This document shows positions 18,256-59,500 of a DNA stretch of 64,000 bases, piece by piece (within the stretch, counting starts at the first letter, position 1; every line of letters starts with the position of its first letter). The stretch spans positions 62,001 through 126,000 of IMG/VR virus record IMGVR_UViG_3300038463_000730, one strand, 5' to 3'. A program made the translations under genes and the position numbers. Under the pieces are notes generated by a model that saw only the letters and a list, made by a program, of their open reading frames with translations, was not told the origin of the DNA and ran no database searches.

Positions 18256-18264
18256 AGGAATACA

Positions 18265-20895: not shown

Positions 20896-20903
20896 AGGAA
20901 ATA

Positions 20904-23795: not shown

Positions 23796-23805
23796 TGGAG
23801 AATAA

Positions 23806-42568: not shown

Positions 42569-42901
42569 TTATCCGTTTCGACCACGATTTCGTTGACTAT
42601 TCGCAAGCTTTATGTGAACGCGCCCGTGCTGTTTCGAGATCCATTGGATCTGCCTGGTAAATGCCTCGTGAGTCATCAAGGCTTCAACGGTGAAGTATTG
42701 CCTCTCAAGTTCTTTATTAGAGAAGAACGCATGGATTGTCCGATGACAATCCCGACATAGTGTTTTCGTAACCTTGCCTCCTCGCGTTTTAGGAACCATA
42801 TGATGATCAGTCGGATGGTAATTTGGCCGAACGCAGAGTGGGCACGGATCGGGATCAGCATTTTTTAGATCCGCAATCGTTGGTTTATTCTGGCTCGTCA
42901 T
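42569..42901 (-). CDS. small HNH protein (YisB-like)
   Basis: CPLC...TDHHMVPKTRGG...LCRDCHRTIH.FFSNKEL. Confidence 0.85.
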   Translation of the reverse strand: MTSQNKPTIADLKNADPDPCPLCVRPNYHPTDHHMVPKTRGGKVTKTLCRDCHRTIHAFFSNKELERQYFTVEALMTHEAFTRQIQWISKQHGRVHIKLANSQRNRGRNG

Positions 42902-43964
42902 CCGAGACTTCTATATCAATTGGTGGAATCGTAATTGGTTGCGGTGCCGGAACGGGCGCCGGAACGTTGAGTGGCTTCGACGGAGTCACGGGTCGCGATA
43001 ACGGGCCATAGCTCGGTGGTAATCCGGCCTTCATCTTTGCTGCTGCCATTGCTGGCGGCACGGGCGTGATATGAGACTGGGAAGCCCGAAGCTTAGCCTG
43101 GTGTGCTGCAACCAACGATTGTGCCTTGGCAAGCTCCTCAGGCGTCGGAATGGGCTGGTTCGGGTCAAGTGACTCGGTAACCGGTTCATCTACTCGATCC
43201 TGATCTAGGTCCCCAAGATCATGCATATCACTAATAGCCTCGAAGACCTTCGGCCCAGCACCGTCCCAAGCATAGAGTGATGGGTATGATCCACGATAGC
43301 GTTTGATGAATGTTCGCATGTCCTCCGTGCTGAACAGACCCTTCACATTATGATAACCTTTGCCATAGGCAGACCCGATTGGGTAGATAGGCTTTACAGC
43401 GTCGGTATAGGCCTTCGCCATGTCTTTCATTCCCTTGTCCATCAAGTCCGCTGCCTGAAGCATCGGTTGATTCTGCTCGGTCCAGTAAAGTTGGGGAAAT
43501 ACGGCATCGCAGTAGCGACCAAATTGGCCGTACGGAAATGTTCCGTGAAAGTTGTAGAAGGCGAACGTGCTGTAACCTAAGAACTTGTCTTTCCCGATCT
43601 TCTTACGAAGTTGTGATAGATAGAGTTCCGCGTCACTTTGAAACCCTTCCCATTCGGATTCCCCGTCAATGATATGACCATCGACTCCTTCTTCGAATAA
43701 CGAATGGATATGGTGAGTTTCAGGAGCCCACGTCGTAGGCTTTGAATAGTTCCACGTAAGGACGAGAAGCCCAGCATCATGTGCCTGCTTGATCATATCT
43801 GGAGCAATCTTGCTGCTCCATTGATTGTTTCGGTACGCATCTCCGCTTTTGACAGCGAGCCACGACACCCCGGCAAGAGAAGCTTTCTTTACGATCGCTT
43901 CCCACGATCCGCTTTCACACGCAGAAATCTTCCAAATGAAAAGTCCGATACCGTCTAAATTCAT
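42885..43964 (-). CDS. GH25-like TIM-barrel muramidase, candidate endolysin, with Pro-rich tail
   Basis: GVSWLAVKSGD, HDAGLLVLTWNY, IIDGE (DxE), PQLYW. Confidence 0.7.
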   Translation of the reverse strand: MNLDGIGLFIWKISACESGSWEAIVKKASLAGVSWLAVKSGDAYRNNQWSSKIAPDMIKQAHDAGLLVLTWNYSKPTTWAPETHHIHSLFEEGVDGHIIDGESEWEGFQSDAELYLSQLRKKIGKDKFLGYSTFAFYNFHGTFPYGQFGRYCDAVFPQLYWTEQNQPMLQAADLMDKGMKDMAKAYTDAVKPIYPIGSAYGKGYHNVKGLFSTEDMRTFIKRYRGSYPSLYAWDGAGPKVFEAISDMHDLGDLDQDRVDEPVTESLDPNQPIPTPEELAKAQSLVAAHQAKLRASQSHITPVPPAMAAAKMKAGLPPSYGPLSRPVTPSKPLNVPAPVPAPQPITIPPIDIEVSDDEPE

Positions 43965-44001: not shown

Positions 44002-44241
44002 CTACTTGAAGTAACGTGAGGAAAATCGTTTAGGTGGAGGATTGTATGAATTCGACCAAATTCCAGGGTCGTCCCATCGAAGATTCGAGATATCTTCAGC
44101 TCTCAACGACGCTAATGCTTCCCGAACCTCTTTTGGCAAACTACCCACAAGCTGTCCCGGCCCAAACGAAGAGCCTCTTCGAGTAAACCTTGGAATATGT
44201 AACCTACCCATCGCAATTTCGAGCGCATCTTTCGGACTCAT
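44002..44241 (-). CDS. small hypothetical protein
   Basis: 79-aa ORF, ATGA overlap. Confidence 0.55.
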   Translation of the reverse strand: MSPKDALEIAMGRLHIPRFTRRGSSFGPGQLVGSLPKEVREALASLRAEDISNLRWDDPGIWSNSYNPPPKRFSSRYFK

Positions 44242-45362: not shown

Positions 45363-46718
45363 TTATCCTTTTCGTTTATCAATTACGTTATTCATCAGCT
45401 TACCAAATGATGAACGATTAGCTGCAACCTTCTCACGAATCTTTTGAGCTTCGTTAATAGTGTCATGAACGCCTGTGTCTAGATTCAATGTCAGATTACG
45501 AGCTGCGTCTTTTGTTCGGACGTTTTCGCTCAACGATTTGGATTCGTTCTTTAGTTGGGTGACACGTGACTCAGGAAGCCCGAGTCCGGCAAACCAACTG
45601 TAGATCTTGACTTCATCCGTACCATCTTCGATCGTATAGATACCCTTGAAAACGCCTTTCGGGTTTCCACACTGCTCGTTCACCATCGCCAACGCATAAT
45701 TCGTATGCATTGATGGAATCCGATCCCATACTGCCTTGGGAGCAGTCAAAATCACTCCGACATAACGCGATTGCGTCAAATCGAATCCTCCAGCTAACAA
45801 GTTTCCGTTCAGATTTTCCATAACAGCCTCAGCCAGAGCCGTTTCACCAACATAATTCTTGACAACCATCTCACCGTATACCGACAAACCTTCTCCATCC
45901 GTAAGCAACTTTCCCCACTCCATCGGATCCAAACCTTTTACGTCCGAAGGCATCGAACTAAGCGTGTTGAACATATCGACCGGCTCAACAATCGCACGGT
46001 TTGCTACCTTGTAGAAATCCAACTGGCTAACGTTCGAATAGATCGATTCGATCTTCGCATTATCCACTACGATTAGATTGTTGATCTTTTTCGTTTGTGC
46101 AAATTTCGAAAGCTTGGCCAGAGTCTCCAGAGCATTGTGTTTTGTCTGGGCGTCCTCGGCATTCATCGGTAGCGCCGCCATAACAGCGAGCGGCTTCCCC
46201 GTGCTGCTGAGAATATCGACCATAGTCTCGCAAGAACCAGCTCCAGAACCGCCACCCAAACTGATACATAGTAGGTTGACTTGTGCAGAATCCAGTTTCG
46301 CCGAAATAAGCTCGGCAATCGAATCTTTATGTGCTTCGGCAGCAGCATGACCAATCGAAAGTTCTTTGGCGGCTCCACCAAGACCGTAGTCTAATAAGAG
46401 TTTATTAGATTCTGGGACATCGATGAACTTCAAATCCTGTGTAGCCGTGTTGATAACGATCGTGTCATAACCGTTCTTGTAAAACGCCTCGGCTAGTCTT
46501 GATCCGGCTTGGCCAGAGCCAACCACTCCTATTCTGATCGATCGCGTTTTCTTTTCTACTACTTTGGCTGCCATATCTGCTTTCTGAGCAAGCTTAGCCT
46601 TCAATGCTGCTAGTTTGGTTGGGTCGAGTGCTTCACTATCTGTGTTTGTTTTGTCTTTTAAGTCGTCCACTAATTCCTCACGAATGTTTTCTGTTGTTAC
46701 TGACTTCGCACTCATCAT
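45363..46718 (-). CDS. tubulin/FtsZ-family GTPase (PhuZ/TubZ-like)
   Basis: GSGQAGSRLA, INTA..D, GGAAK, signature GGGSGAG, VVDN, T7-loop-like LDPME; start uncertain (46718, 46715 or 46574). Confidence 0.9.
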   Translation of the reverse strand: MMSAKSVTTENIREELVDDLKDKTNTDSEALDPTKLAALKAKLAQKADMAAKVVEKKTRSIRIGVVGSGQAGSRLAEAFYKNGYDTIVINTATQDLKFIDVPESNKLLLDYGLGGAAKELSIGHAAAEAHKDSIAELISAKLDSAQVNLLCISLGGGSGAGSCETMVDILSSTGKPLAVMAALPMNAEDAQTKHNALETLAKLSKFAQTKKINNLIVVDNAKIESIYSNVSQLDFYKVANRAIVEPVDMFNTLSSMPSDVKGLDPMEWGKLLTDGEGLSVYGEMVVKNYVGETALAEAVMENLNGNLLAGGFDLTQSRYVGVILTAPKAVWDRIPSMHTNYALAMVNEQCGNPKGVFKGIYTIEDGTDEVKIYSWFAGLGLPESRVTQLKNESKSLSENVRTKDAARNLTLNLDTGVHDTINEAQKIREKVAANRSSFGKLMNNVIDKRKG

Positions 46719-46732
46719 ATATCGCTTAATTC

Positions 46733-47695
46733 TCAGAGATTTAGGTAGAATTTGTTGTTTTGATACCACTCAATTGTGTTGGCAATTCCGTTCCGGAATT
46801 TGATTCCAGGGGTCCATCCCAGGTTCTTAATTTTCGTTGTATCGACAGCATATCTAAAGTCATGGCCGGGGCGATCTTTGACAAACGAGATCAAATCATG
46901 TCCCGCTCCCATTACTTTGCAAACCTCATGAACAACCTCAATATTGGAGAACTCCTGGCAAGCCGATACGTTGTACGTTTCGTTCGGCGGAGCTGACTTC
47001 ATGATCGTCAAAATGGCTGCACAGTTATCGAACACGTGGGTCCAATCACGCAACTGCAACCCTTGCCCGTAAACAGGGATCGGTGTCTTATCCATGATGC
47101 ACTTGACAATCTTGGGAATGAACTTCTCCGGCGTCTGGCGTGGTCCGTAATTGTTTGACGGTCTAACAATGTTAAAGGGTAAATCAAATGTTGCCGAGGC
47201 CGCTCGCACGAGCAGTTCGCCGGATGCCTTCGATGCTGAATACGGATTCCGAGGACCAAGTGGGTTGTCTTCGCTCCACGGCGCCTCGCCATCAGCAAGT
47301 TGACCATAGACCTCATCCGTGCTGATGTAGATCAGTCTACCAACCTTGTGTTTGACACATGCGTTGATGACATTCTGGGTGCCTAGAATGTTGTTCTTAA
47401 CGAAGATGTTCGGGTTCTCAATCGATGTATCAACGAATGTTTCGGCAGCACCGTGGATGACTATATCTGGATTTTCAATAGAAAATACGTTGTCCATAAT
47501 ATGGTCGTCGCAAACATCCACAATATAGAATTGGTGATTCTTGTTTGCGTAGACTGAGTTGAGGTGATTCTTTCGAGATACCCGATCAATACTAGTGAAA
47601 GTGTACGGATGCTTTTCGTAAATAGCCTTGCGTAGAAAATTCGAAAAGATGAAACCAAGCGAACCGGTGACCAATACTTTTTGTCTATCACTCAT
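46733..47695 (-). CDS. rfbB: dTDP-glucose 4,6-dehydratase
   Basis: VTGSLGFI, HGAAETFVD.SI, ISTDEVYG, PYSASK, SNNYGPRQ.PEK.IP, RDW, DRPGHDFRYA. Confidence 0.92.
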   Translation of the reverse strand: MSDRQKVLVTGSLGFIFSNFLRKAIYEKHPYTFTSIDRVSRKNHLNSVYANKNHQFYIVDVCDDHIMDNVFSIENPDIVIHGAAETFVDTSIENPNIFVKNNILGTQNVINACVKHKVGRLIYISTDEVYGQLADGEAPWSEDNPLGPRNPYSASKASGELLVRAASATFDLPFNIVRPSNNYGPRQTPEKFIPKIVKCIMDKTPIPVYGQGLQLRDWTHVFDNCAAILTIMKSAPPNETYNVSACQEFSNIEVVHEVCKVMGAGHDLISFVKDRPGHDFRYAVDTTKIKNLGWTPGIKFRNGIANTIEWYQNNKFYLNL

Positions 47696-48032: not shown

Positions 48033-48367
48033 TACTTCTTTTTTGGATACGTAACGTTCGCCACTGTAATACAGATCGATTTCTCAACATCCGGGCTACA
48101 ACAACCATCGCCGCACCCGCTGTAAGCTTCGGCTTCAGCCGTGAAGCAGATATCTTTTGTTCCAAACAATTTGGATAGTTTCGTTAGATGCTCAAACGTA
48201 ACCGTTTCGTCAAGACTGAACTCAAGACACTTCTGTTTCTCCATCCACTTTATGCCAGAGCTGTTTATGTAGCGAGCAAAAATACCCTCTAATTCTACGC
48301 TAAGTTGATGTTGAATTGTTCGTTGAGGCGACAATGTTTTCGTGGCTGGTTTTTTCTTGGAGGCCAT
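48032..48367 (-). CDS. hypothetical protein
   Basis: Likely start MASKKKP; YSGCGDGC motif. Confidence 0.65.
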   Translation of the reverse strand: MASKKKPATKTLSPQRTIQHQLSVELEGIFARYINSSGIKWMEKQKCLEFSLDETVTFEHLTKLSKLFGTKDICFTAEAEAYSGCGDGCCSPDVEKSICITVANVTYPKKK

Positions 48368-49178
48368 AGTTCGGATCCTTTTCATATGATTCACTATCGA
48401 CAATGTATTTATCTGCCCATTTGCTACGAAAATGTTTCACGTTGGATGACATGAATAAACGGTTTACCGGATTCTTGAGAAGCGTAACGGATTCGGCATG
48501 CAGGATATTAGTAGCCCCACAATAGATGACATTCTTAGCTGTCGCCTTCCTGATGGCCAGGCACAGATCAATATCCTCAAACGCCCACTGATATTTCTCG
48601 TCCATACCCCCGATACCACTCTTATTTTGAGTCCAAACATTACGATAGTCTCCGGCTCGTGTCATCAACACGGCTCCCGTTACGGACTGGAAGTAGCGAT
48701 TCTGTTTGGCATGATCATCTACCGTCTCACCGGCACGAAAATGCCACGGCATCCCACCCTTATGCGTAGGAAAATAGACTCCAGCATGTTGCAGTTTCTT
48801 CGGTTCATTGGTAAACATCAGTCGAGCCCCGACGACGCACGTTCGGTCATCAAGGCAATCAAGCATCGCCTGAATTGACCCGGTGTCTTGTAGAACAACA
48901 TCGTTGTTCAATAGCATGACGACATCGTTGTCTTCCGGAGCGGCTTGGTTGAAGATGTAGTTCATGCCTTCGGCGAAGTTCTGACGGTTGTTAGGATACT
49001 CATAGACACGGACATTAGGGCCCCAGGTCCGGGCTTCCTGAACCGTGCCATCTTCCGAACCGTTGTCTTTGATATGCCAGGTATGCTCGATACCTTCCAG
49101 AGCAGGCATGAGCGAGACCTTGAGGGTTCGTAACATACTGAGCCCGTTCCATGTCAGTGTCATCAGATGTAGCATCAT
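48300..49178 (-). CDS. GT2-family glycosyltransferase (rhamnosyltransferase-like)
   Basis: DNGSEDGT, NFAEGMN, LLNND, QHAG, VTGAVLM, FEDIDLC, HAES. Confidence 0.9.
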   Translation of the reverse strand: MMLHLMTLTWNGLSMLRTLKVSLMPALEGIEHTWHIKDNGSEDGTVQEARTWGPNVRVYEYPNNRQNFAEGMNYIFNQAAPEDNDVVMLLNNDVVLQDTGSIQAMLDCLDDRTCVVGARLMFTNEPKKLQHAGVYFPTHKGGMPWHFRAGETVDDHAKQNRYFQSVTGAVLMTRAGDYRNVWTQNKSGIGGMDEKYQWAFEDIDLCLAIRKATAKNVIYCGATNILHAESVTLLKNPVNRLFMSSNVKHFRSKWADKYIVDSESYEKDPNYGLQEKTSHENIVASTNNSTST

Positions 49179-49618
49179 TGTCCTTTTATCCAAGAGAGTT
49201 CCGAAGTTAGATCATTTCTCTTAGCCTGTAACTGTTCCATTTCATTTCGATAGATATCCTTTAGTTCTTCACGCTGGTTATCTATATCGAGGATCTTCTT
49301 TTCAAGTGCCGCGACACGCTCGGCACCACGTAACTTGTTCTCTTCGTAATACTCTTGCATCAACAACATATCTTCGTTTCCATCCTCGTCACGAGGAGGA
49401 AGAACGGTTACACATACATTACGATCCTTCACCACCATCCGGACTTCCGGGCGATGACCCGAGGCATAGATGATATCACCCGCGCGAGTCCGGCCAACCT
49501 TCTTAGCCGTGCTCATCAAAGCATGAAGGTCTTGCTCGGCGTGCCACGCTGCATGATCAGGTAGCCATCGACTAGCGAATTGTTCTACCGCATGATTAGT
49601 TAAGGTAAACTGTTTCAT
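49175..49618 (-). CDS. hypothetical protein (LTNHA..F..R N-terminus, C-terminal coiled coil)
   Basis: 147-aa ORF; N-terminal half resembles small RelE-like folds (weak). Confidence 0.6.
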   Translation of the reverse strand: MKQFTLTNHAVEQFASRWLPDHAAWHAEQDLHALMSTAKKVGRTRAGDIIYASGHRPEVRMVVKDRNVCVTVLPPRDEDGNEDMLLMQEYYEENKLRGAERVAALEKKILDIDNQREELKDIYRNEMEQLQAKRNDLTSELSWIKGQ

Positions 49619-49619: not shown

Positions 49620-50627
49620 TTACAACCCCACAGTTAGTGTTCCAAGGAACAACCAATTAGCTCCAGTATCGAACCCGAGTGTAGGACCGAGATACAGGTT
49701 CTTCATCAACGGGAAATGCTGTCCGATGTTGTAACTAACCGGTGTCACAAGTAAGGCCAGATTACGGTTAACCACCGCATAACCAATACCAACATCCAAG
49801 AAAGTCCAATCCGGCGTCGTCTTCGACTCCCCGTAGGACATAAGTGAAACTGCCAACGATGGCACAACGTCAAAGTTATGAGCTGGTAGTGCGAGGCCAC
49901 CGCTGATACCCATGTAGAGACGTGGGTTCCAGAAAGACCACGAAGCAGCGGGAACTTGTTGTTCAAATCTTGAGGAGTCGATCGGAACGGCATATGTTTT
50001 CCCATCTGAGTCGATCATCATCTTGTTGTAGACATAGTCGCGATCATTCGCATCTTTGCCAATCACCGTAACCACGGTATACTTGCGTGGATAAACCTGG
50101 TAATCCCATGGAGTCGGGCTCCATGAAGAAAAAGATACTTGGCCGATCGGAATCGGAACCCCACCATCGGATACATCTTCATTAAGTTTAAGCTCTGGAG
50201 CTGTCTTGGCGTAGCCATAAGGGTCCGGACACGCCACAGACTTTCCATCACAGATAATCGACGGAGGAGGACCGGCATCGACATTTGTATCGGTACCGGT
50301 TGACTTGGCGTTCGTAACATTTTGACCAATTGTCGAAACCGAAACAACATTGATGCCATCTACTTTTGCCCCAAGCCCGTTTAGGTTATCCTGGATAGTT
50401 TTCAAGTTGACATCGTTTGCCGTAGCAAGACTAGCTATGTCCGCTTTTGTAGCGTAGCTGTCCTGGGCACGAATGACGTTGTTTGCTAACTGCTGAGTAG
50501 CGACGTTTTGATCCTGAATTGCTTTCTGTTGCTTGGCCAGATCAGTTTGCTTGACGATGATGAACACGATGCCTGCACTTAACAGGATCGCGATCAGATA
50601 AATTAACGCTCGTTCTTTTAGGCTCAT
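49620..50627 (-). CDS. membrane protein: N-terminal TM anchor, coiled coil, C-terminal amphipathic beta strands
   Basis: LIYLIAILLSAGIVFIIV; C-terminal alternating strands ending WLFLGTLTVGL. Confidence 0.7.
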   Translation of the reverse strand: MSLKERALIYLIAILLSAGIVFIIVKQTDLAKQQKAIQDQNVATQQLANNVIRAQDSYATKADIASLATANDVNLKTIQDNLNGLGAKVDGINVVSVSTIGQNVTNAKSTGTDTNVDAGPPPSIICDGKSVACPDPYGYAKTAPELKLNEDVSDGGVPIPIGQVSFSSWSPTPWDYQVYPRKYTVVTVIGKDANDRDYVYNKMMIDSDGKTYAVPIDSSRFEQQVPAASWSFWNPRLYMGISGGLALPAHNFDVVPSLAVSLMSYGESKTTPDWTFLDVGIGYAVVNRNLALLVTPVSYNIGQHFPLMKNLYLGPTLGFDTGANWLFLGTLTVGL

Positions 50628-51454
50628 ACTGCACCCCATTTAATGTGAAGATTGGCATCCCAAACTAGTTTGTCTGCCCATTTCTTTGTGAAGATCTGGC
50701 GTGCCTTCGTATACAAAGAAGCTGTATCGAGCGCCTTACTTGTCATCTTGCCGAAATGGGTGACCGGCACAGGAACAGTAGACATCGCTATTCCAGCGCT
50801 CATGGCTCGCATAGACAGGTCGGTGTCCTCAAAGTAAGCAAGGCCGAACTCACTAGAGAACGGCCCTTCATCACCAGGCAGGACCAACTTGTCGAAGACC
50901 TTCTTCGAACCTACCAAACACCAGCCAGACAAGTAGTCTACCAACGTGCCATCACCAAACACTCCGTCCTCTCGAACGAAGTTCAGAGCGGGGTTGAGGT
51001 GACCTACGGTTGGTCCGGCCAGTTCCCCTCGCATCGCTGCCTGAAACAGCGGCACGGTCCAGTTGTGGTGGTCCGAGCGAACTCGAATATCATTGTTTAG
51101 GAACAGGACATTCGGAGCTGAAGCCAACTTGTAGCCGCGATTGCATGCTTGAGCAAAACCGCGGTTCTCCGGAAGCCGGTGGTAGACAGGAGGATTGGCT
51201 GTCGCGATGAGCTTCAATTGACCAAGTTGGTCGTTGTTTATTTCTCGCCGATCTCGTCTATAACAAGCTTCCTCGTATTCACTCATCAAATCTTGATGAA
51301 ACGATGTCAGCTTCTCTTGCGTCTCGTCCGTGCTTCCGTTGTCCACGACAATGATTTCGTTGTCGGAACCAAGCCGGACAAGATCACGGAGGCAATCGCG
51401 AGTGAAATTGTATTTGTTCCAAACCGGAATGACGATGCTTAGGTTAAAATCCAT
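50624..51454 (-). CDS. GT2-family glycosyltransferase
   Basis: SIVIPVWN, VVDNGSTD, NRGFAQACN, FLNND, YFEDTDLS. Confidence 0.92.
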   Translation of the reverse strand: MDFNLSIVIPVWNKYNFTRDCLRDLVRLGSDNEIIVVDNGSTDETQEKLTSFHQDLMSEYEEACYRRDRREINNDQLGQLKLIATANPPVYHRLPENRGFAQACNRGYKLASAPNVLFLNNDIRVRSDHHNWTVPLFQAAMRGELAGPTVGHLNPALNFVREDGVFGDGTLVDYLSGWCLVGSKKVFDKLVLPGDEGPFSSEFGLAYFEDTDLSMRAMSAGIAMSTVPVPVTHFGKMTSKALDTASLYTKARQIFTKKWADKLVWDANLHIKWGAV

Positions 51455-51496: not shown

Positions 51497-52582
51497 TTAG
51501 ACGCACAATTTCATGATTTTATCGGTAACGATTCGCCAATCGTATTGCTCGATAATTTGCGCGCTTGCTGCATTGTGATTCTTTTTGATCTCAGTGAAAT
51601 TCTCGTACAAATGACGCAGCTTCGAAACCGCATCGTCTACCGATGGGTAGAAATAACTCGTATTGATTTTTGACTCCCAATACAGAGCTTTTCTCGGAGC
51701 GTAATCTTCCTTGCCATCGATCAAGATCGAGTTATCCAGGCTCAAATAATCAAGCTGCCCGCCGAAGTTCGGCGCGACCACGACCAGGCCCGCGGCCAGG
51801 GCTTCGAGCCCAGGGAAGAAGAATCCTTCGGCGTGTGTCATCGTGAACAAAGCATCGCAGCTACGGTACAAGTCCTGAATGTCAGTGATAAACTCATTGA
51901 CGATCCGAACCTCAGCCTTTTTGTACGTCTGCCGAAACGTATCGTAAATGTCGTTGAACGAAACCTCAAACTGTTGCTCTGGTTTCTTATTCACAACCTT
52001 TAGGACGAGACAGACATCCTCATTTTTATCGAAGGCCTTTCCGAAAACCTCCAACAAGCCTGGAAGATTTTTCCTTACATGTGGCTGAGCGATATTGGCA
52101 AGGATCCTGAATTTACCCTTGGTCTTTAACGGATACGGTTTTGCATTTCGATATCGGTCCAGATCAATTCCATGAGGAACCATGGTCATGATGTTTTCCG
52201 GGACACCCGACTCACGAAAGATCTCGTACGCATATCGAGATGGCGGAATTAACCGGTCACAGTATTTGTAGAACTTGGTGAAACCTTCTGGTAGGGCGTT
52301 CTTACCTTTGAACTCGAAACACCAGATAGCTAGCCTGTTCTTCGCTCCATTAGCCAAGTAACGAGGAAAATTACCAGGAGCAGTATAGGTAAGCTGCGCA
52401 TCGTACTGGCCCGTTGGAACCTGTTTCAAAAAAGGCTTCAGATCTTCCGGAAGAGTCTTCTCTCCATCGGTACTAACCAGCTCTACATCGTGTTCCTTGC
52501 GGACTAATTCACGACTGATACTTTGTGCTACATGTGCCCAAGAATGGTTCTTACCGAGATAGCCTTGCCACTTTATTCTCAT
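51497..52582 (-). CDS. GT4-family (GT-B) glycosyltransferase
   Basis: VPHGID, RKNL, EGFFFPGLEALAAG (EX7E), GGQLDY. Confidence 0.92.
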   Translation of the reverse strand: MRIKWQGYLGKNHSWAHVAQSISRELVRKEHDVELVSTDGEKTLPEDLKPFLKQVPTGQYDAQLTYTAPGNFPRYLANGAKNRLAIWCFEFKGKNALPEGFTKFYKYCDRLIPPSRYAYEIFRESGVPENIMTMVPHGIDLDRYRNAKPYPLKTKGKFRILANIAQPHVRKNLPGLLEVFGKAFDKNEDVCLVLKVVNKKPEQQFEVSFNDIYDTFRQTYKKAEVRIVNEFITDIQDLYRSCDALFTMTHAEGFFFPGLEALAAGLVVVAPNFGGQLDYLSLDNSILIDGKEDYAPRKALYWESKINTSYFYPSVDDAVSKLRHLYENFTEIKKNHNAASAQIIEQYDWRIVTDKIMKLCV

Positions 52583-53337: not shown

Positions 53338-56300
53338 TTACGGCAGTCCGAGAATATTCGCGAGCTGTGTCGAATTGAGCAACAGAACATTGTTGTTGAA
53401 TCCGGCCTTCTTCAGTAGAACGGTCACCTGAACCTTCGTATTCAACGTCTGAAGAATATTGTCTTCCTGAAGATGCGTAAAGTTCAACGTTAAGAGTCCG
53501 GTCGTGTAATCGATGTATACACCGATCGTGTCGTCTACAATGACTCCGGAGTAACCGTCTGTCGAGATTCCGGCCAAGTTTGGATAGAACGATTGCAACG
53601 ATACACTGAACCGGCACTGATTCAATTCCAACCCTGATGGATTACGAATGAATGTTCCGTCAGCGAATCGCATCGCCGGATAACCAAGACGAGTCGTACC
53701 GTTGCCATAGAAATCGGATACACAATCAGTGAAAATGTTGATCGTGTGTTCTTTGGCAAAGTCGATCGGTGGTATCTCAAGAACGATGGTTCCAACCTCG
53801 TAGTCAACTTTGAAGTAGTCACCATTCGGTACTACTAGTTGACCACCAACAACTATGTTTGATGGGGCAAAGAAGTCGTTCCGCCCCGGATCCACCGGAG
53901 TAGTAACCGGATATTGAACGAAGCCGTTCTCCGGTGGCAGAGGCGGAGGAGGAGGCGACGTCAAGTACGAGAACGTAGCCGGAACCGCTTTTGCGTTCGA
54001 TGTGCAGGCTACCAAGCTTGGCTGCCATGTCAACTGTCGAACTACCGTGTACGGGATCGGCGAGGCAACGAAATTGTAGCTTGCCAACGATGAATCATCC
54101 GTCATCAAATCTGGAGTCTGGTGTAAGATCGAATTACGATTTCCAGCTGTGCCGGTGTAGTAATCGTCATAACGTTCGTCATACTCTTCCAATGTCAATT
54201 CGACAATCTGGAATGTTGTCCCGACAATATTGCCAGGCTGACCGATGGAGTAACCATCGGCATAACTACTGATTGCGTTTACGTCTTGCAAATCGATAAT
54301 GAAATTGCTATTCACATCAGCTCGCATGAACGCGCGAATGTAGTTATCATCGACGATTGTTTTTTCGATCGCGATTGTGTGCAGATCAATTACTGATCCA
54401 ATCACGAATGTTCCGCTGTTTGTCGGATTGCTGACATCAGTCAACACAATCGGGTAGCCGGTGATATTCGGAATAGAAGTAAAGTCGAACGCGATGTCGT
54501 TCAATGTTGCGACAGATGCAGTATATCCATCTGTCAGCGCAACAGCAGCCGGTGCCAACATACCAACACCGCTGTATCCGTCAATCGTGAACTGAATAAC
54601 ATTCGAGGTAACGAATGGAGTCGTGTTAACTAGATACTGTTGGTACGTAGGTGAGGATACGAGTGACTGCCCGAGTAACACGGATCCAGCGACCGAGGCG
54701 TCCTCCTGGGTAACCGTTCCGTCGCCATCGACGTCCCCGTAAATCTCGGTGAACAACTGAGCCGAACCGACTCGATAGGTAGGAGAAGATGTTGGTGTCG
54801 TATTGACAGTGAACTTCGCATTTGTAAAGCTGCCGTTCAAAAGCGCTGTCACGAGCGCAACGTTATTGTACCCGTCAAGTGGATTGTTATCTACCTTGAT
54901 CAGTACTTTGTTCTTGTAGATACCGAAGTGGTAAAGCAAGAACGAAGATGGTATCGGATGGCCACCGAGCGTGGCCTGGCTGGAGTTCAATACCTTGACG
55001 TTGAAGTCCTGGATCGTTCCAACAATGAACGGTTCGGTTGTCTCCTGAAGCGCGGTAACGGTCTGGTCGAGCATCAAACTCAACTTCGGCACATACTGCT
55101 GCTTAGAGAACACTGGTTGACCGGTCGTCTGATTGTCCTGCTTGTTCGTCTGACTCAATACAGCTTGCATGACAGCTGTGTATTGCTGTGTAGTCGTGAA
55201 CGGTATGTTCCGTACGATGTTATCGATCGTAGCGCCGGTATTCGGATCGCTCGTTGTCTTTGGCAGAACCATTCCTTGCCCGGCATCGTAACCCTGACCG
55301 TCTGTAATCTTTGCTGCATCGTTGTAGATGCGGTACCACAACGTCTCGCCAGGAATATCTGTCCAACTTGTACCGTTGAACAACGTGTCCCTAGTATTGC
55401 TATTGGTTGGCTGGCCGGTTGGCATGACGAAATCGAACTGTTCACTCGTTGCACCGGAACGTTTCAATGTAAAAGCATAGTACGAACCAACAGTCAATGC
55501 TCCAGAGCCAACCGTCGTATTACTCAATACAAAATCTACCGGCTGTAGATATCCGTCCAATGTGATGCCGGTTGCCTGAAGTGAATTGAAACTGTAGCTA
55601 ATCTGTGCAAGGATGATGTTCGATGGGTCGTAGTCAATTGCAAGCTGAGGAACGATCTGACTTGAGTTCGAAACAGATGATTGCAACTGATAGAGTGTCA
55701 AAACAAGATTGTCATCAAAAGTATTGCTTGTTGACGTTAACTGCGGGGCACCGGGTGCTGGGTTTTGGTTCCAAATACCACCAGCCAACAGCACAGTTAT
55801 TTTCTGAATGTTGTTTGTTGTTGCCTGGAACTTAACTCCAAGCTGTGTCGTTACATCATTTGATAGAAGAGGACGTAGCTGAGTATACCCGGTCGAGATA
55901 TTGAGACTCGTAATATCGTAGCCCTGGCAACAAGCTGATAGCAATACACCGAGAGTAACGTAAGCTGGATCTAGATATAAATCGCGAAAGAATAGATTGG
56001 GCGATTGGTCTTGGGCAACACCAAGAATGTCACGAGAGATCGTGAACGCCGGGGCCTCGTCGATGATCAACGTCCCACCAAGATTAAACGACGTTCCGAC
56101 AATGCCACGCATATCGTTGAACAGAACGGATAGAACGTTGGCAAAATGCTTCGTACTAACCTGGACCTCATTGTTCCTGAAATAGAACGTCTCGTATTGT
56201 AAGTTACCTGCGAAGTCTAACCCGAACACGGCTACCTTGATCGCTCGGCGATCGAATGCCGCAGAGTTGGTCATGTTCAATCGTAACTGGACACCATTAA

Positions 56301-56547
56301 TCAGATCACTCGGCTGTGTTGCCGTGACAATCGGTTTGCCATCCAAGTTACCAACGACACTATCCGTGTTGAGTAGGATGTTGGGCGTGAGAGTGTTGAG
56401 CAGTACACCGGACCCGAAATGGTTGTTGACTACCGCAGTTACGGCTCCATCGTTGTGAGCCTGTTCCACCGTCATATTCTGAGCAGAGACCTGCTGAGAA
56501 TCAAACCATATGTTTTCTAACGTACTTACTGGTTGTCTTTGGGTCAT
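53338..56547 (-). CDS. large virion (baseplate/tail) protein with split dockerin-like Ca-binding repeats
   Basis: WFDSQQVSAQNMTVEQ N-terminus; GDVDGDGTVTQEDA and ADVNSNFIIDLQDV; follows the baseplate genes. Confidence 0.7.
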   Translation of the reverse strand: MTQRQPVSTLENIWFDSQQVSAQNMTVEQAHNDGAVTAVVNNHFGSGVLLNTLTPNILLNTDSVVGNLDGKPIVTATQPSDLINGVQLRLNMTNSAAFDRRAIKVAVFGLDFAGNLQYETFYFRNNEVQVSTKHFANVLSVLFNDMRGIVGTSFNLGGTLIIDEAPAFTISRDILGVAQDQSPNLFFRDLYLDPAYVTLGVLLSACCQGYDITSLNISTGYTQLRPLLSNDVTTQLGVKFQATTNNIQKITVLLAGGIWNQNPAPGAPQLTSTSNTFDDNLVLTLYQLQSSVSNSSQIVPQLAIDYDPSNIILAQISYSFNSLQATGITLDGYLQPVDFVLSNTTVGSGALTVGSYYAFTLKRSGATSEQFDFVMPTGQPTNSNTRDTLFNGTSWTDIPGETLWYRIYNDAAKITDGQGYDAGQGMVLPKTTSDPNTGATIDNIVRNIPFTTTQQYTAVMQAVLSQTNKQDNQTTGQPVFSKQQYVPKLSLMLDQTVTALQETTEPFIVGTIQDFNVKVLNSSQATLGGHPIPSSFLLYHFGIYKNKVLIKVDNNPLDGYNNVALVTALLNGSFTNAKFTVNTTPTSSPTYRVGSAQLFTEIYGDVDGDGTVTQEDASVAGSVLLGQSLVSSPTYQQYLVNTTPFVTSNVIQFTIDGYSGVGMLAPAAVALTDGYTASVATLNDIAFDFTSIPNITGYPIVLTDVSNPTNSGTFVIGSVIDLHTIAIEKTIVDDNYIRAFMRADVNSNFIIDLQDVNAISSYADGYSIGQPGNIVGTTFQIVELTLEEYDERYDDYYTGTAGNRNSILHQTPDLMTDDSSLASYNFVASPIPYTVVRQLTWQPSLVACTSNAKAVPATFSYLTSPPPPPLPPENGFVQYPVTTPVDPGRNDFFAPSNIVVGGQLVVPNGDYFKVDYEVGTIVLEIPPIDFAKEHTINIFTDCVSDFYGNGTTRLGYPAMRFADGTFIRNPSGLELNQCRFSVSLQSFYPNLAGISTDGYSGVIVDDTIGVYIDYTTGLLTLNFTHLQEDNILQTLNTKVQVTVLLKKAGFNNNVLLLNSTQLANILGLP

Positions 56548-56550
56548 TGT

Positions 56551-59500
56551 TTAGGGTTCCTCATATGTAATCGTAGCTCGCGAAACGGCTGGCTTTAGGG
56601 TATTTATCAGTGTTTCTAGAACAGATTGCACATCTTTGCTTCCACTAACAATGCCAAATGAATCAATGATATTGATCGAAAAATCGAAGATGCCGAAATT
56701 CTCGTTTTTGAGCAAAGCGTAGTTTGTATTTAGCTTCTGCACGGTATTGAAATCCAGCAAATAGGTCGTATAAAGGTCCGTTGTGACCGGGAATGTCGCG
56801 GCAACGTTCGCGTTATAGTTGACATCAATCGGTACGCCGAACGCTATGAATGGCTGTCTCATGATATCGCTAATGCGTAAATTATCGATTAAACAGTTAC
56901 CAATATTCTTCCCATTATAGTCTGATCCAATATTGAACTGGTTTACTTGATCAGTTGTTTTGATCGATGTAAAGATGGCGCTCTGGCCAACGAAAGACTG
57001 GCCAAAAACGATATTCTGACCGAATAGCAATCCCTGACCGTACAACACGTTTCCATGCTCAAACCCATCTACAAAGAGGTGGATCTGGTCATTCGTGCCG
57101 CCTGAGTTGACGGTCCAAGTTGCCTTGACGCGGTGCCATGTTCCGGCTTGCCAGAAAATAGGAGTCCTGACCTGATAGTCATTGCCAGCTCCACGAATAT
57201 CGAACGTCAAATACCCGTACGGGTCCTTGTAGATGCTGAGTCGATCGCCTTTCAATCCGTTCGGAATGTAAGTTACGATCACAGGAGTCTGCTCATTTGG
57301 CAGCGGGTCGGACAGATTGATTGTCTGCAAGTCAGAACTGACCGAACCTTGTCCACCGTAGTAGTTGTAGCTCTGATTTCCGTACTGAAGAGTGACCGAC
57401 ACAACCGTTCCGATCAATCCGGCAACCTGCACGGTCGCACGGTTCGTGCTGCTAACCTGTTCCGTTATGATACCTGAGGCATCGAAATAGAATCGGTAGA
57501 CTGGGTCGTTGTATGTATCGATGAACGGATTGGCCCAGAACTCGATCGAGCCTGGAGTTCTGGTGTTCAGAAGGCCGAGGTTGTCCACGGTCATCGGTTG
57601 TTTATCCAAGATCACGCTCTGACCGAAATTCGGATTCACACTGGAACCATACTGAAGCAACGAACGATCTGCGTTGATGTAGAACGGAGCCGAGTTGGCA
57701 GCCGTGGCATCATTCATTGTCAACAACGTGAGTGTGTTTTTCGAAATCGGCGGAGGATTGATCGAGTTGAACAGTTGGGTGACCGAGCCAGTCATCGGGT
57801 TGACCGCTTCACCGACACGGGTATCGGACAACATGATCGAATCGATCCGTACCTGGTCAACAATCGCATTGATCTGGTGGCTTCCAGACAAGTCCGAACC
57901 AATATAGGTTGACTTCATCAACGGATCGAACTTTGCAGCAAGATACGTTGCATAGGTGAACTGATACGTTCCCTGTGTCAACAGGTACGGTTGTCCAGGT
58001 GTTGGTGCGTTTTCGAAGAAGAACGTTCCGTTCTGAAGTCCGTTTCGAACAGTGGTTGTGTTGAGGATTTCGTATGGAATAGCGTTTGGGTATGCCGGTG
58101 GACTAGCCTTTGTTCCAAGGAATGTTGCTGGGAATGGCGTAGCAACGGTCAAGTTGTTATTGTCCTGCACAGATACAATTTTGTAGTATCCAGCGGCAGC
58201 ACCAGCATTCATCCCTGGAAAAATGTGAATGTAATTTCCAACATCAATCGGAGTAAACAATGCATTAGTATCAGTAAAGGTTGTCTGCCCGATCGTTCCT
58301 TCTGGAGTATTGCCCCAGAAGACCTGGTAGCTGTATTGGATGACAGGATAGTTTGGGCTCGATTCCGACACGGTCAAGTAATCTGTTTCGAACACAGTCA
58401 ACACGAATGCATTCTGATTCAGGTTGATCGGATTGTACTCGGCTGTGATCGAACTGACGCAGAGGAACATCGTTCCGGTATCGAGTGTCTCTTCACCAGT
58501 GAAGGTGAGTGGCACGGATTCATAACCCGTCGATGTTAATCCATCGATCGTAACGGTTACAGGGAATGTGACATTCGTTCCAGCCAGCCGTACTGATAGT
58601 TTCCGGCCCGGATCTCCACGTCCAACGTTCGAACAGCTTGTGTACCCATCGAAGTTTGTTGCGGTCCACAAATAGTAACCGTCATTAACCGACTGCGATG
58701 GATAGACTGCGGTCTCGGTCATGAGAAACTTCGTAATCTTGACATCCGACAAACTCACCGGAGGTGGCAACACGGTCTGCAAGAAATTCTGACAGTTGCC
58801 CCAAGCGTAGTAACGCTGGGTCACGTATTTGAAGTTCAATCCGAGCGGCTTGATCAGTAATGTATCTCCGGCCTCGGCGCCATTCGATAGAATAATCTGG
58901 TTGTAGCCATCACTTTCCGTAATCTCGTAATACGGAAACAATGCGCGGGGTCCAGGGATCTCCGTTTCAACTCCAGAGCGCAGAACCGTAACAGCAATGT
59001 TTTTGTAAAGATCAATTCTGGTCTTTACATCAATCGTGAGCTGGTTCACAGAGTAGTTTACCGATGTCAAACTCAATGGCATCGAGGCACTCAAAGTCAG
59101 TTGGTTACCATTTACGTTAGTAATGGTGTAGTATGTATCGAAGCCAATCTCCTGAATGTACAGTTTATCATTGACCTCAATTCCAGCGGCATCGAAGCTC
59201 TGTCCTGCCGTTACGATGGCCGAGCCAGCAATCGTGACCATGTCATCGCCTGCTGTGATGGGGCGCGTAATGACTGAGACAATTTCCTCCGGGTTCGGCG
59301 TGCGGAACCGCTGTCCGAAATTGATCGGAATCTTCGTTCCATAACGAATGAGATTCGGAACCTCCAACCCGTCGATAAACAGGTGGATCTCGTCCTGGCT
59401 TGACTGAGAGTTCAAGGTCCACGATGTTGCAACGAAGTGAGGTTGGTTCGATATCCAATTGCTTACGTCCGCGCTGACCTGGTATTGAGCCCGATTGTTA

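What the first reader, a model, noticed from the sequence alone, without database searches (positions are those of the whole stretch)
49620..50627. Single protein with an inner-membrane-type anchor, coiled coil and outer-membrane beta-barrel-like C-terminus
The N-terminal TM helix has no obvious lipobox and is followed by a Q/N-rich coiled coil and a Cys pair. About six amphipathic strands follow (LYMGISGGL, VVPSLAVSL, FLDVGIGY, LLVTPVSYNI, LYLGPTLGF, WLFLGTLTVGL). Known unimolecular spanins use an outer-membrane lipoprotein N-terminus and a C-terminal TM, so this would be the reverse arrangement. Inference: a new envelope-bridging spanin type or an oligomeric outer-membrane pore, which also implies a diderm host.
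Basis: inference. Interest (0 to 1): 0.6.

Follow-up and report, generated by a model that had tools for sequence, protein, structure and literature searches.

The report
Huge-phage protein predicted to bridge both membranes
A conserved gene of uncultured huge phages encodes a protein with an inner-membrane helix at one end and a tiny outer-membrane-type six-strand beta-barrel at the other, an arrangement not seen in any described family; it may tether or fuse the two membranes, but its function is untested.

Summary
Window 49620-50639 (-) is a real, conserved gene of 339 aa (335 aa from the likelier start at 50627). It lies in a 434.7-kb phage genome from peat.

- **N-terminus:** one strongly hydrophobic helix and no lipobox, followed by a short Q/N-rich helix.
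- **Middle:** an alpha/beta domain modelled with high confidence that has no match in the PDB. About half of the family carries a Cys pair here.
- **C-terminus:** a 6-strand meander. Across 155 relatives, bulky hydrophobic positions alternate with Gly/Ser/Ala/Thr, the strands carry almost no charge, and aromatics sit at the strand ends. The chain ends in a G-x-x-V-G-[L/F] motif that resembles a BAM beta-signal.
- **Family:** no Pfam or PHROG hit, and no relative among cultured phages or bacterial genomes. The family is nevertheless large: 660 representative clusters, several on contigs of 340-503 kb.
- **Context:** in 32 of 34 loci the gene sits in a fixed block of tail fibres, GT4, GT2, target, GT2, NDP-sugar dehydratase and tubulin. 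A GH25 muramidase follows 2-7 genes after the target in 18 loci. A second clade lacks this block.

My best reading is a single-chain inner-to-outer-membrane tether that may work like a spanin (about 0.3). An oligomeric pore is not supported. No experiment or localisation predictor was available.

The parts
49620..50639 (-). Target ORF of 339 aa (P0001). The likelier start is M5 at 50627, giving 335 aa. The stop codon is at 49620-49622.
   Evidence: 22 word-search homologues; 660 representative clusters by profile search
50553..50609 (-). Residues 11-29: a strongly hydrophobic N-terminal helix, read as an inner-membrane signal-anchor. It has no lipobox and no polar c-region, and the conserved FIIVKQ motif lies at its end.
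   Evidence: KD 2.96; conserved in 149 of 155 relatives; modelled as one helix 7-43
50454..50552 (-). Residues 30-62: a Q/N-rich juxtamembrane helix or possible short coiled coil. R57 is invariant, and Q38, I41, L51 and I55 are nearly invariant.
   Evidence: weak profile hit to GCN4-fusion coiled coils, E 0.04
49944..50453 (-). Residues 63-232: an extracytoplasmic alpha/beta domain of two short helices and about ten strands. It contains the Cys pair C130 (50250-50252) and C137 (50229-50231) and the conserved DPYGY, VPxGxVxF, PW and PRxY motifs. No known fold matches it.
   Evidence: domain model pLDDT 89.7, pTM 0.78; best PDB Z 5.5 and no Foldseek hit at E<=0.001; Cys statistics
49623..49943 (-). 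Residues 233-339: a six-strand antiparallel meander modelled as a closed narrow barrel. One face is bulky hydrophobic and the other is Gly/Ser/Thr/Ala. Aromatics sit at the strand ends. The three loops on the far side are short (4-5 residues) and the two turns on the near side are longer (7 and 11 residues).
   Evidence: sub-threshold OMP_b-brl_2 hits in 5 of 77 relatives
49623..49640 (-). Residues 334-339: the C-terminal hexapeptide. The family consensus is G-L-[R/K/S]-V-G-[L/F], which matches the GxxPhixPhi core of the BAM beta-signal. This window has T at position 334.
   Evidence: column statistics over 155 sequences: last residue L 122, F 26, M 5, I 2; V337 106; G334 98
50624..51454 (-). 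Upstream GT2 glycosyltransferase, translationally coupled to the target by an ATGA overlap.
   Evidence: PF00535, E 1.6e-16; present in 22 of 34 loci
51497..52582 (-). GT4 / GT-B glycosyltransferase.
   Evidence: PF13439 and PF00534; phrog_2170, E 8e-34; present in 29 of 34 loci
48300..49193 (-). Downstream GT2 glycosyltransferase. A 147-aa soluble coiled-coil ORF at 49175-49618, found only in this window among the 34 loci compared, separates it from the target.
   Evidence: PF00535, E 2.5e-8; present in 25 of 34 loci
46733..47695 (-). NDP-sugar 4,6-dehydratase/epimerase.
   Evidence: PF16363, E 9.5e-60; present in 32 of 34 loci
53338..63246 (-). Two giant fibre-like proteins of 1069 aa and 2231 aa (the larger has a weak Laminin_G_3 hit). 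They lie just downstream of a baseplate-J-like gene (63271-63960) and head the conserved block.
   Evidence: present in 27 and 23 of 34 loci
42885..43964 (-). A 359-aa protein in the slot between tubulin and the UvsW helicase. In 18 related loci a GH25 muramidase occupies this slot, so this may be a replacement wall hydrolase. That is unproven.

Best explanation
The gene encodes a single polypeptide that most likely spans the whole envelope of a diderm host. None of the steps below is shown by experiment.

**Proposed topology and assembly (inferred).**
1. The N-terminal 19-22-residue hydrophobic helix stays in the inner membrane as an uncleaved type-II signal-anchor.
2. The rest of the chain is exported. 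It comprises a short Q/N-rich helix, a family-specific alpha/beta domain often stapled by a disulfide, and a 107-residue C-terminal domain.
3. The C-terminal domain is inserted into the outer membrane by the host BAM machinery through its GxxVG[L/F] terminus.
4. It folds there as a very narrow, pore-less, glycine-lined six-strand beta-barrel that serves as an anchor, not a channel.

**Proposed function (more speculative).** The result is a covalent tether between the inner and outer membrane. The most likely use for a phage is a spanin-like one. Once the wall is degraded, the tethers are free to cluster or collapse and to disrupt or fuse the outer membrane in the last step of lysis.
For: - **N-terminal helix.** KD 2.96, conserved in 149 of 155 relatives, no lipobox, and conservation runs to its last residues, FIIVKQ.
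- **Exported location.** A Cys pair occurs in the middle domain of 83 of 155 relatives, which fits an oxidising compartment.
- **Strand chemistry of the C-domain.** Over 155 sequences, L/I/V/F fractions of 0.85-0.98 alternate with Gly/Ser/Thr/Ala. Gly244, 248, 270, 284, 286 and 318 are each at 0.75-0.97. Charged residues make up 1% of the hydrophobic face, and 6% of all strand positions against 17% in the middle-domain strands. Aromatics sit at strand ends at 234, 237, 242, 269, 278, 287, 303 and 316.
- **C-terminus.** The consensus is G-L-[RKS]-V-G-[L/F], and the last residue is L or F in 148 of 155.
- **Model.** The C-domain has pLDDT about 90.
- **Structural neighbours.** The best PDB match is the designed n=6, S=8 barrel BBn6 (Z 9.6, rmsd 2.7 A over 85 residues). 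Designed transmembrane barrels, OmpW, PagL, NspA and OmpA follow at Z 4.9-5.6. In the ESM Atlas every named neighbour is an outer-membrane barrel family: OmpA_membrane/OMP_b-brl TM 0.51, OMP_b-brl_2 0.55, DUF5020, CopB, DUF481 and IAT_beta.
- **Sequence hint.** OMP_b-brl_2 is the commonest Pfam hit among 77 C-domains: 5 members, best E 0.0013.
- **Spread.** The family has 660 representative clusters with one fixed architecture and occurs in two different gene contexts, as expected of a core function.
- **Neighbourhood.** It is the only consistently membrane-bound product in the conserved block. A GH25 muramidase follows 2-7 genes after the target, co-directionally, in 18 of 34 loci.
- **No rival spanin found.** A crude scan of the 434.7-kb genome found no canonical two-component spanin pair.
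Against: - There is no experimental or predictor-based localisation. SignalP, DeepTMHMM and beta-barrel predictors were not available.
- Six strands is below the minimum of eight known for natural outer-membrane barrels. The closest solved structure, BBn6, is a soluble design.
- The positive-inside rule is ambiguous: a mean of 1.4 K/R before the helix against 2.3 in the 15 residues after it.
- The window protein itself hits no Pfam OMP family, and the hits in relatives are below threshold.
- The gene is embedded between glycosyltransferases, not between holin and endolysin.
- The periplasmic part has little coiled coil, unlike Rz-type spanins.
- There is no independent evidence that the host is diderm.
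- The compact domains may be too short to span a typical periplasm unless the linkers are extended.
Confidence: 0.3

Rival explanations
1. The protein is the membrane component of the phage glycan cassette (GT4, GT2, target, GT2, NDP-sugar 4,6-dehydratase). It would anchor, guide, export or receive a phage-made deoxy-sugar glycan at the envelope. That could mean modifying host surface polysaccharide, or maturing the glycosylated tail fibres encoded just upstream.
For: - The target is sandwiched between glycosyltransferases and the dehydratase in most of the 32 clade-1 loci, down to 33% identity. Counts out of all 34 loci compared: GT4 29, upstream GT2 22, downstream GT2 25, dehydratase 32.
- Its start is translationally coupled to the upstream GT2 by an ATGA overlap.
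- Two other divergent members also have a GT close by: GT8 in L013 and GT2 in L010.
- It is the only membrane protein in the cassette.
Against: - It shows no similarity to Wzx, Wzy, Wzz, OPX, ABC-transporter or phosphoglycosyl-transferase families.
- The GTs are small soluble types and no flippase is present.
- Clade-2 members (P0171, P0019) lie among dUTPase, IF3, peptide deformylase and thioredoxin genes, with no GT in the DNA available.
- The same syntenic block also carries unrelated genes (tubulin, helicases), so adjacency is weak evidence.
Confidence: 0.2
2. The protein is an inner-membrane-anchored periplasmic protein whose C-terminal barrel is not in the outer membrane. The small hydrophobic barrel would be soluble, bind a lipid or another hydrophobic ligand, or dock on a host envelope protein. 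Possible roles include superinfection exclusion, envelope remodelling or interference with a host machine such as BAM or Lpt.
For: - The best solved match is a soluble designed 6-strand barrel.
- Soluble 8-strand barrels of lipid- or ligand-binding proteins and the LptG jellyroll score about as well as outer-membrane proteins: LpqH, Rv0813, Rv2717c, TbpB/NHBA barrels and LptG, at Z 4.3-5.6.
- No natural 6-strand outer-membrane barrel is known.
Against: - Both faces of the strands are apolar or small and almost free of charge. That would be unusual for a water-exposed 107-residue domain.
- The conserved terminal GxxVG[L/F] motif and the aromatic belts are left unexplained.
- All named Atlas neighbours are outer-membrane barrels.
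Confidence: 0.2
3. The N-terminal helix is a cleaved Sec signal. The mature product would be an ordinary, if tiny, outer-membrane protein with an N-terminal periplasmic domain, like an OmpA in reverse order. It would not bridge the envelope.
For: - Small residues sit in the middle of the hydrophobic run (SAG at 21-23 here; AAA, VGA or IGS in relatives) and could serve as a signal-peptidase site.
- The N-terminal region is basic (K8, R10).
Against: - The hydrophobic run is 19-22 residues long and continues for 6-8 strongly hydrophobic, conserved residues (IVFIIV/FIIV) past any candidate site.
- It is followed at once by K-Q, with no polar c-region.
- It is modelled as one continuous helix running on to residue 43.
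Confidence: 0.12
4. The protein forms an oligomeric outer-membrane pore. Two to four protomers would pool their six strands into a barrel of 12-24 strands, as in TolC or YadA, held together by an N-terminal coiled coil.
For: - The Q/N-rich heptad-like segment could oligomerise.
- A monomer model cannot tell an intra-chain strand 1 to strand 6 pairing from an inter-chain one.
Against: - The inward-facing positions are dominated by highly conserved glycines. This is expected for a lumen too narrow for side chains, not for a wide water-filled channel.
- The monomer closes confidently into an n=6 barrel.
Confidence: 0.05

Closest known systems
Unimolecular spanin gp11 of phage T1
   Same: One phage-encoded polypeptide is proposed to be anchored in both the inner and the outer membrane. 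Its periplasmic part is largely beta rather than coiled coil.
   Different: gp11 is anchored to the outer membrane by an N-terminal lipoylated Cys and to the inner membrane by a C-terminal TM helix. Here the order is reversed and the outer-membrane anchor would be a beta-barrel, not a lipid. There is no sequence or family similarity, and the gene is not in a lysis cassette.
Two-component spanins (lambda Rz/Rz1; T4 PseT.3/PseT.2)
   Same: Like the i-spanin Rz, this protein has an N-terminal type-II TM anchor with charged residues after it, an exported domain and periplasmic Cys residues. T4 shows that spanin genes can lie far from the other lysis genes (established knowledge).
   Different: Rz is almost all coiled coil and needs a separate lipoprotein partner. 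I found no embedded or adjacent lipoprotein ORF here. Only about 30 residues are helical beyond the TM.
Small 8-stranded outer-membrane barrels (OmpA TM domain, OmpX, OmpW, PagL, NspA; Pfam OMP_b-brl and OMP_b-brl_2)
   Same: Shared features are the dyad repeat, the aromatic belts, a C-terminal GxxPhixPhi terminus, an even strand number and a meander topology. Structural similarity reaches Z 4.9-5.4 and TM 0.51-0.55, and there are sub-threshold Pfam hits.
   Different: This domain has six strands, not eight or more. Its interior is glycine-lined rather than polar. The loops on the far side are very short. It has an uncleaved-looking N-terminal anchor instead of a signal peptide. No family hit passes threshold.
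BBn6 (PDB 9XZT), a de novo designed n=6, S=8 beta-barrel
   Same: It is the best structural match to the C-domain model (Z 9.6, rmsd 2.7 A, 85 of 90 residues). Its authors report that this fold is rarely if ever seen in natural proteins (PMC12478100).
   Different: BBn6 is a soluble design with a packed hydrophobic core and a polar surface. The phage domain has the opposite surface chemistry.
OmpM/SlpA-type outer-membrane tethers of Terrabacteria, and VirB10 of type IV secretion
   Same: OmpM/SlpA have the layout N-terminal anchor, helical stalk, C-terminal outer-membrane barrel. VirB10 is a protein known to contact both membranes through an N-terminal inner-membrane helix (established knowledge, not tested here).
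   Different: OmpM/SlpA anchor to peptidoglycan through an SLH domain and have large barrels. VirB10 enters the outer membrane with helices and is part of a large machine. I detected no homology to either.

Membership tests
Unimolecular spanin (T1 gp11 type) | N-terminal lipoprotein signal with a lipobox Cys as the outer-membrane anchor | tested here: not met
   There is no lipobox. Only 4 of 155 relatives have a chance lipobox-like string.
Unimolecular spanin (T1 gp11 type) | C-terminal TM helix as the inner-membrane anchor | tested here: not met
   The only TM helix is N-terminal (residues 11-29). The C-terminus is beta.
Spanins in general | Gene located in or next to the holin/endolysin cassette | tested here: inconclusive
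   Not adjacent. The flanking genes are glycosyltransferases. A GH25 gene lies 2-7 genes after the target in 18 of 34 related loci, and in this window a different 359-aa protein fills that slot. No holin-like gene is nearby. T4 shows that linkage is not obligatory.
Spanins in general | Required for outer-membrane disruption; complements Rz/Rz1 defects | not testable with these tools
   This needs genetics in a cultured system. No cultured phage carries the gene.
i-spanin (Rz-like) | Type-II N-terminal TM followed by a long, mostly coiled-coil periplasmic domain, with a partner o-spanin lipoprotein gene embedded, overlapping or adjacent | tested here: not met
   The TM is present, but only about 30 helical residues follow before an alpha/beta domain and a barrel. 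The embedded and adjacent ORFs lack a signal or lipobox.
Outer-membrane beta-barrel proteins (BAM substrates) | Amphipathic dyad-repeat strands with a lipid-facing hydrophobic surface and aromatic belts | tested here: met
   Column statistics over 155 sequences.
Outer-membrane beta-barrel proteins (BAM substrates) | C-terminal beta-signal (GxxPhixPhi, with the last residue hydrophobic or aromatic) | tested here: met
   The family consensus is G334-L-[RKS]-V-G-[L/F]339. The last residue is L in 122, F in 26, M in 5 and I in 2 of 155. The window protein has T334. The terminal residue is mostly aliphatic rather than aromatic.
Outer-membrane beta-barrel proteins (BAM substrates) | An even number of strands, eight or more in every known natural monomeric barrel | tested here: not met
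   There are six strands.
Outer-membrane beta-barrel proteins (BAM substrates) | Cleavable Sec signal peptide | tested here: inconclusive
   By inspection it looks like a signal-anchor: a 19-22-residue hydrophobic run, no c-region, and conservation to its end. No signal-peptide predictor was available.
Outer-membrane beta-barrel proteins (BAM substrates) | Significant match to a curated OMP family model | tested here: not met
   The window protein has no hit. OMP_b-brl_2 appears in 5 of 77 relatives' C-domains, best E 0.0013, below the cut-off. Neither PF13568 nor PF13505 rings in the genome.
Polysaccharide export/co-polymerase proteins (Wzz/PCP, Wza/OPX) | Match to the PCP or OPX family models; two TM helices (PCP) or a lipoprotein N-terminus (OPX) | tested here: not met
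   No Pfam hit of that kind appears for the protein or for 21 relatives. There is one TM helix and no lipobox.
Trimeric autotransporter adhesins | Cleaved signal, coiled-coil stalk and a 4-strand YadA-type C-terminal anchor that trimerises | tested here: not met
   There is no YadA_anchor hit. The domain has six strands, not four. The trimer job gave no verdict and is not used as evidence.

The most novel reading that the evidence does not exclude
The C-terminal domain is a genuine six-strand transmembrane beta-barrel. That would make it the smallest natural outer-membrane barrel and a natural example of a fold so far validated only by de novo design. A whole lineage of huge phages would use it, together with an inner-membrane helix in the same chain, as a new class of envelope-spanning protein: a third, 'reverse' type of spanin.
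Probability: 0.25. Interest if true: 0.85.

Novelty: new variant of a known kind. Interest (0 to 1): 0.6.

Why it matters
- **Barrel biology.** If the topology is right, the accepted lower limit for natural outer-membrane barrels falls from eight strands to six. It would also show BAM handling a substrate that remains tethered to the inner membrane.
- **Phage lysis.** It would add a third architecture to the phage proteins that couple the two membranes. It could also explain how a large, uncultured lineage of 340-500-kb phages breaches the outer membrane without recognisable spanins.
- **Host assignment.** The family would become a marker for a diderm host in that lineage.
- **If the reading is wrong.** This is still a large protein family (660 clusters at 50% identity) with a fixed three-part architecture and a middle domain of unknown fold. 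It sits in one of the most conserved gene blocks of these phages, so it deserves a name and an experiment.

Tried and rejected
**Family and homology searches**
- Pfam and PHROG scans of the protein gave nothing.
- A Pfam scan of 21 full-length relatives gave only noise: DUF16, DUF3139 and similar.
- tblastn of the protein and two divergent relatives against 50,697 deposited phage genomes gave no match, and megablast of the region gave none either.
- A profile search against PDB sequences returned only weak coiled-coil noise.
- The word search with the C-domain profile found only fragments of the same family. No stand-alone barrel proteins and no bacterial OMP relatives appeared.

**Related-locus scans**
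- The search for related loci with the 21-sequence alignment failed for lack of conserved words.
- Single-protein scans found nothing for P0019 and P0171.
- The P0001 scan returned two false positives. They are an SbcC/Rad50-like coiled-coil protein sharing the word NLKTIQDN, and I discarded them.
- An 8-sequence alignment then worked on viral contigs. It found nothing in 185,579 bacterial and archaeal species genomes.

**Leads that did not hold**
- DUF6549 and DUF6808 came up in Atlas and BFVD as Flavobacterium and Cellulophaga phage proteins. No literature mentions them, PF20186 does not ring in this genome, and I could not fetch the sequences.

**Fold and complex searches**
- The whole model gave only weak Foldseek rows, including fHbp, TbpB and lysenin. 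I rejected them as noise at TM 0.1-0.17.
- The middle domain has no convincing PDB match.
- Complex prediction with three copies of the C-domain returned 'no answer' (score 0.01). It is reported only here and counts neither for nor against oligomerisation.

**Lysis genes in the 434.7-kb genome**
- Phage_lysozyme, Amidase_2, Peptidase_M15_4 and GH25 gave no match.
- There are two weak SLT hits far from the window.
- A crude lipobox and TM scan found no convincing i-/o-spanin pair.

**Host identification (unresolved)**
- The higher-GC ends of the record carry short phage-like ORFs, not host genes.
- Shine-Dalgarno use is intermediate: 32% against a 10.5% background.
- No OMP or OmpA family genes are present.
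- The related NCBI assembly is not mentioned in the searchable literature.
- The DNA occurs in peat metagenomes from several studies, with no RNA holder.
Full report
**1. What is there**

Window 49620-50639 on the minus strand is an open frame of 339 aa. The second Met, M5 at 50627, is the likelier start. Its ATG overlaps the stop codon of the upstream glycosyltransferase as ATGA. Most relatives begin at that position, and the public collection holds the 335-aa form. The next gene starts one base after the stop, so the gene sits in a tight co-directional array.

The window is bases 62001-126000 of a 434,688-bp virus record. Near-identical DNA is present in peat metagenomes from several studies. 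The window has no tRNA gene. It encodes baseplate, giant fibre, helicase and tubulin-like proteins, so this is a huge tailed phage.

**2. The observation checks out**

- *Hydrophobic helix.* Residues 11-29 are the only strongly hydrophobic 19-mer (Kyte-Doolittle 2.96).
- *No lipobox.* None is present.
- *Q/N-rich segment.* Residues 30-62 are rich in Gln and Asn and have a heptad-like spacing. AlphaFold2 extends the helix only to residue 43 with falling confidence, so a coiled coil is plausible but short and unproven.
- *Cys pair.* C130 and C137 lie in a conserved C-x6-C-P-D-P-Y-G-Y stretch. Two or more Cys occur there in 83 of 155 relatives, and 58 relatives have none.

**3. It is a large, uniform, unnamed family**

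Pfam and PHROGs give nothing. The word search found 22 relatives at 35-80% identity. A profile search of 1.84 billion representatives found 660 proteins at E<=0.001, and 210 of them at E<=1e-30. The full-length hits among the 150 listed are about 300-357 aa and match end to end, and the shorter ones match only part of the profile and look like fragments.

No deposited phage genome has it. No bacterial or archaeal species genome was found to have it. Known carrier contigs reach 340-503 kb. The ESM Atlas places its nearest clusters almost wholly in Uroviricota.

**4. Three-part structure**

The full-length model has mean pLDDT 79, with about 90 over the last 110 residues.

*Middle domain.* Residues 58-238 were modelled alone with 78 sequences and reached pLDDT 89.7 and pTM 0.78. 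The domain has two short helices on an antiparallel sheet of about ten strands. Its best PDB match is Z 5.5, and Foldseek finds nothing at E<=0.001. Both are within the tools' stated noise range, so I treat it as a fold without a recognised relative.

*C-terminal domain.* Residues 233-339 are a six-strand up-and-down meander that closes into a barrel.
- Its best PDB match by a clear margin is BBn6 (9XZT): Z 9.6, rmsd 2.7 A, 85 of 90 residues.
- BBn6 is a de novo designed soluble barrel with n=6 and S=8. Its authors found almost no natural counterpart to it (PMC12478100).
- The next matches are designed transmembrane barrels, a Thermus outer-membrane protein, OmpW, PagL, OmpA and NspA at Z 4.9-5.6. 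Some soluble barrels and the LptG jellyroll score at the same level.
- In the ESM Atlas, every named structural neighbour of residues 228-339 is an outer-membrane barrel family.

**5. Is the C-domain membrane-embedded?**

The coordinates of the model are not available to me, so I used the family alignment of 155 sequences.
- *Alternation.* Positions 241, 243, 262, 264, 266, 280, 283, 298, 301, 317, 321, 335, 337 and 339 are 85-100% L/I/V/M/F. Positions 244, 248, 270, 284, 286, 318, 334 and 338 are 87-100% Gly/Ala/Ser/Thr, mostly Gly.
- *Charge.* Charged residues make up 6% of C-domain strand positions against 17% in the middle domain. They make up only 1% of the hydrophobic face.
- *Aromatics.* Tyr, Trp and Phe concentrate at strand ends (234, 237, 242, 269, 278, 287, 303, 316).
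- *Terminus.* The chain ends in G-L-[R/K/S]-V-G-[L/F], which matches the GxxPhixPhi core of the BAM beta-signal. That motif is established knowledge and was not tested functionally here.
- *Weak sequence link.* Among 77 C-domains scanned separately, the commonest Pfam hit is OMP_b-brl_2 (5 members, best E 0.0013, below threshold).

A barrel of only six long strands has room inside for little more than glycine. That explains the conserved inward glycines and argues for a closed, pore-less anchor rather than a wide oligomeric channel.

The counter-arguments are real. No natural 6-strand outer-membrane barrel is known. The best solved match is soluble. No curated OMP model is matched significantly. 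I had no localisation or beta-barrel predictor.

**6. Anchor or signal peptide?**

The uncharged run is 19-22 residues long. It is conserved to its last residues (FIIVKQ), has no polar c-region and is modelled as one helix, so I read it as a type-II signal-anchor.

Two cautions apply. Small residues in mid-helix could be a peptidase site. The positive-inside count is ambiguous (1.4 K/R before the helix, 2.3 after), although lambda Rz shows the same ambiguity (my own knowledge). The frequent Cys pair and the OMP-like domain favour an exported C-terminal part.

**7. Context**

I compared 34 loci: the window, 6 loci from exact-protein look-ups and 27 from IMG/VR.

*Clade 1.* Thirty-two loci share one block: giant fibre, 1-kb fibre, (231-aa protein), GT4, GT2, target, GT2, NDP-sugar 4,6-dehydratase, tubulin, a few small genes, UvsW helicase, two conserved unknown proteins, IstB-like ATPase and DnaB.
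- The slot between tubulin and UvsW holds a GH25 muramidase in 18 loci (PF01183, E 1.9e-21 for L015).
- In the window and two relatives that slot holds a different protein, at 42885-43964 in the window. Its only hit is a weak GDPD (glycerophosphodiester phosphodiesterase) match, E 0.002.
- Homing endonucleases and an Fpg/Nei-like gene are often inserted just upstream of the target.
- The target is the only consistently membrane-bound product in the block.

*Clade 2.* Three divergent members lie instead between a dUTPase and IF3, peptide deformylase and thioredoxin genes.

So the link to glycosyltransferases is strong within one clade but not universal. The link to a wall hydrolase is loose.

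*Rest of the genome.* It shows no Phage_lysozyme, Amidase_2, M15_4 or GH25 match. It has two weak SLT hits, one of them in a 227-aa protein with an N-terminal TM helix. It has no obvious two-component spanin.

**8. Explanation and rivals**

| Reading | Probability |
|---|---|
| Single-chain tether from inner to outer membrane (helix in the inner membrane, six-strand barrel in the outer), used in a spanin-like way at lysis | about 0.3 |
| Membrane component of the conserved glycan cassette | 0.2 |
| Inner-membrane-anchored periplasmic protein whose barrel is not in the outer membrane | 0.2 |
| Ordinary small OMP made from a cleaved precursor | 0.12 |
| Oligomeric pore | 0.05 |

The topology alone, without the function, I put at about 0.5. 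The trimer prediction returned no verdict and is not counted either way.

**9. Comparison with known systems**

- *Spanins.* The protein works like, but is not a member of, the spanins. It fails the defining features of T1 gp11 (lipobox, C-terminal TM) and of Rz (long coiled coil, lipoprotein partner).
- *Outer-membrane proteins.* It resembles small OMPs in strand chemistry and terminus. It fails on strand number, signal peptide and family-model match.
- *PCP, OPX and autotransporter families.* It shows no similarity to them.
- *Layout analogues.* The N-terminal anchor, stalk and C-terminal barrel recall OmpM/SlpA tethers. The two-membrane contact recalls VirB10. Both are analogies from my own knowledge and not detected homology.

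**10. Verdict**

The feature is real, strongly conserved and undescribed, and its architecture is unusual. Neither the spanin role nor the diderm host is shown, and the oligomeric pore is unlikely. I score interest at 0.6. The finding is computational only, but it makes clear, cheap and decisive experiments possible.

Noticed in passing
window 45363-46769 (-): A tubulin/TubZ-like gene (PF00091, E 4e-15; TubZ-like_C weak; phrog PhuZ weak). It is conserved just downstream of the dehydratase gene in 31 of 34 related loci, so it is a core gene of this huge-phage lineage.
   Followed up: partly
window 42885-43964 (-); L014 11646-12449; L015 11496-12290: The slot between tubulin and the UvsW helicase holds a GH25 muramidase in 18 related loci. 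In this window, L002 and L019 it holds an unrelated 264-359-aa protein whose only hit is a weak GDPD match (E 0.002). This may be a non-orthologous replacement of the endolysin.
   Followed up: partly
window 44941-45360 and 44238-44933 (-): Two adjacent ORFs of 139 and 231 aa are tandem paralogues. They share N-terminal and C-terminal motifs (ending ...FVDRRL[KR]VLK). They have no family hit and fell in a cluster of their own among the 34 loci compared.
   Followed up: no
window 50624-50627: The ATG of the target (M5) overlaps the TGA of the upstream GT2 gene as ATGA, which suggests translational coupling. The downstream 147-aa gene starts one base after the target's stop.
   Followed up: yes
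L020-L044, just upstream of the target homologue: Mobile or unrelated genes are repeatedly inserted right next to the target in relatives: a LAGLIDADG-type endonuclease on the opposite strand, other homing-endonuclease-like ORFs, and an Fpg/Nei-like glycosylase (starting MPEGVEV) in 16 loci.
   Followed up: partly
genome G000 C1 307371-308054 (-), outside the window: A 227-aa ORF with an N-terminal hydrophobic helix and a weak SLT (lytic transglycosylase) match, E 0.002. It is a candidate signal-anchored endolysin. A second weak SLT hit lies in a 714-aa ORF at about 197.6 kb.
   Followed up: partly
genome G000 C1 390467-390799 (-), outside the window: A 110-aa ORF with a prepilin-type N-terminus (FTLIELMIV). 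Two other small TM proteins, at 60729-61049 and 364225-364518, share a similar A..KW motif after the helix.
   Followed up: no
genome G000 C1 1-30000 and 390000-434688: The ends of the record have 50-57% GC against 44-51% in the core, and the record is flagged 'provirus'. Their ORFs are short and phage-like, so no host flank could be recognised.
   Followed up: partly
window 12385-25659 (+): A run of four very large co-directional ORFs of 1956, 876, 976 and 617 aa on the opposite strand from the target block. I did not examine them.
   Followed up: no
L011, L012 (IMG/VR contigs of 230 and 416 kb): A 586-aa SbcC/Rad50-like coiled-coil ATPase shares the exact word NLKTIQDN with the target's Q/N-rich segment. 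This is a chance hit, but it shows that the segment is coiled-coil-like in composition.
   Followed up: yes
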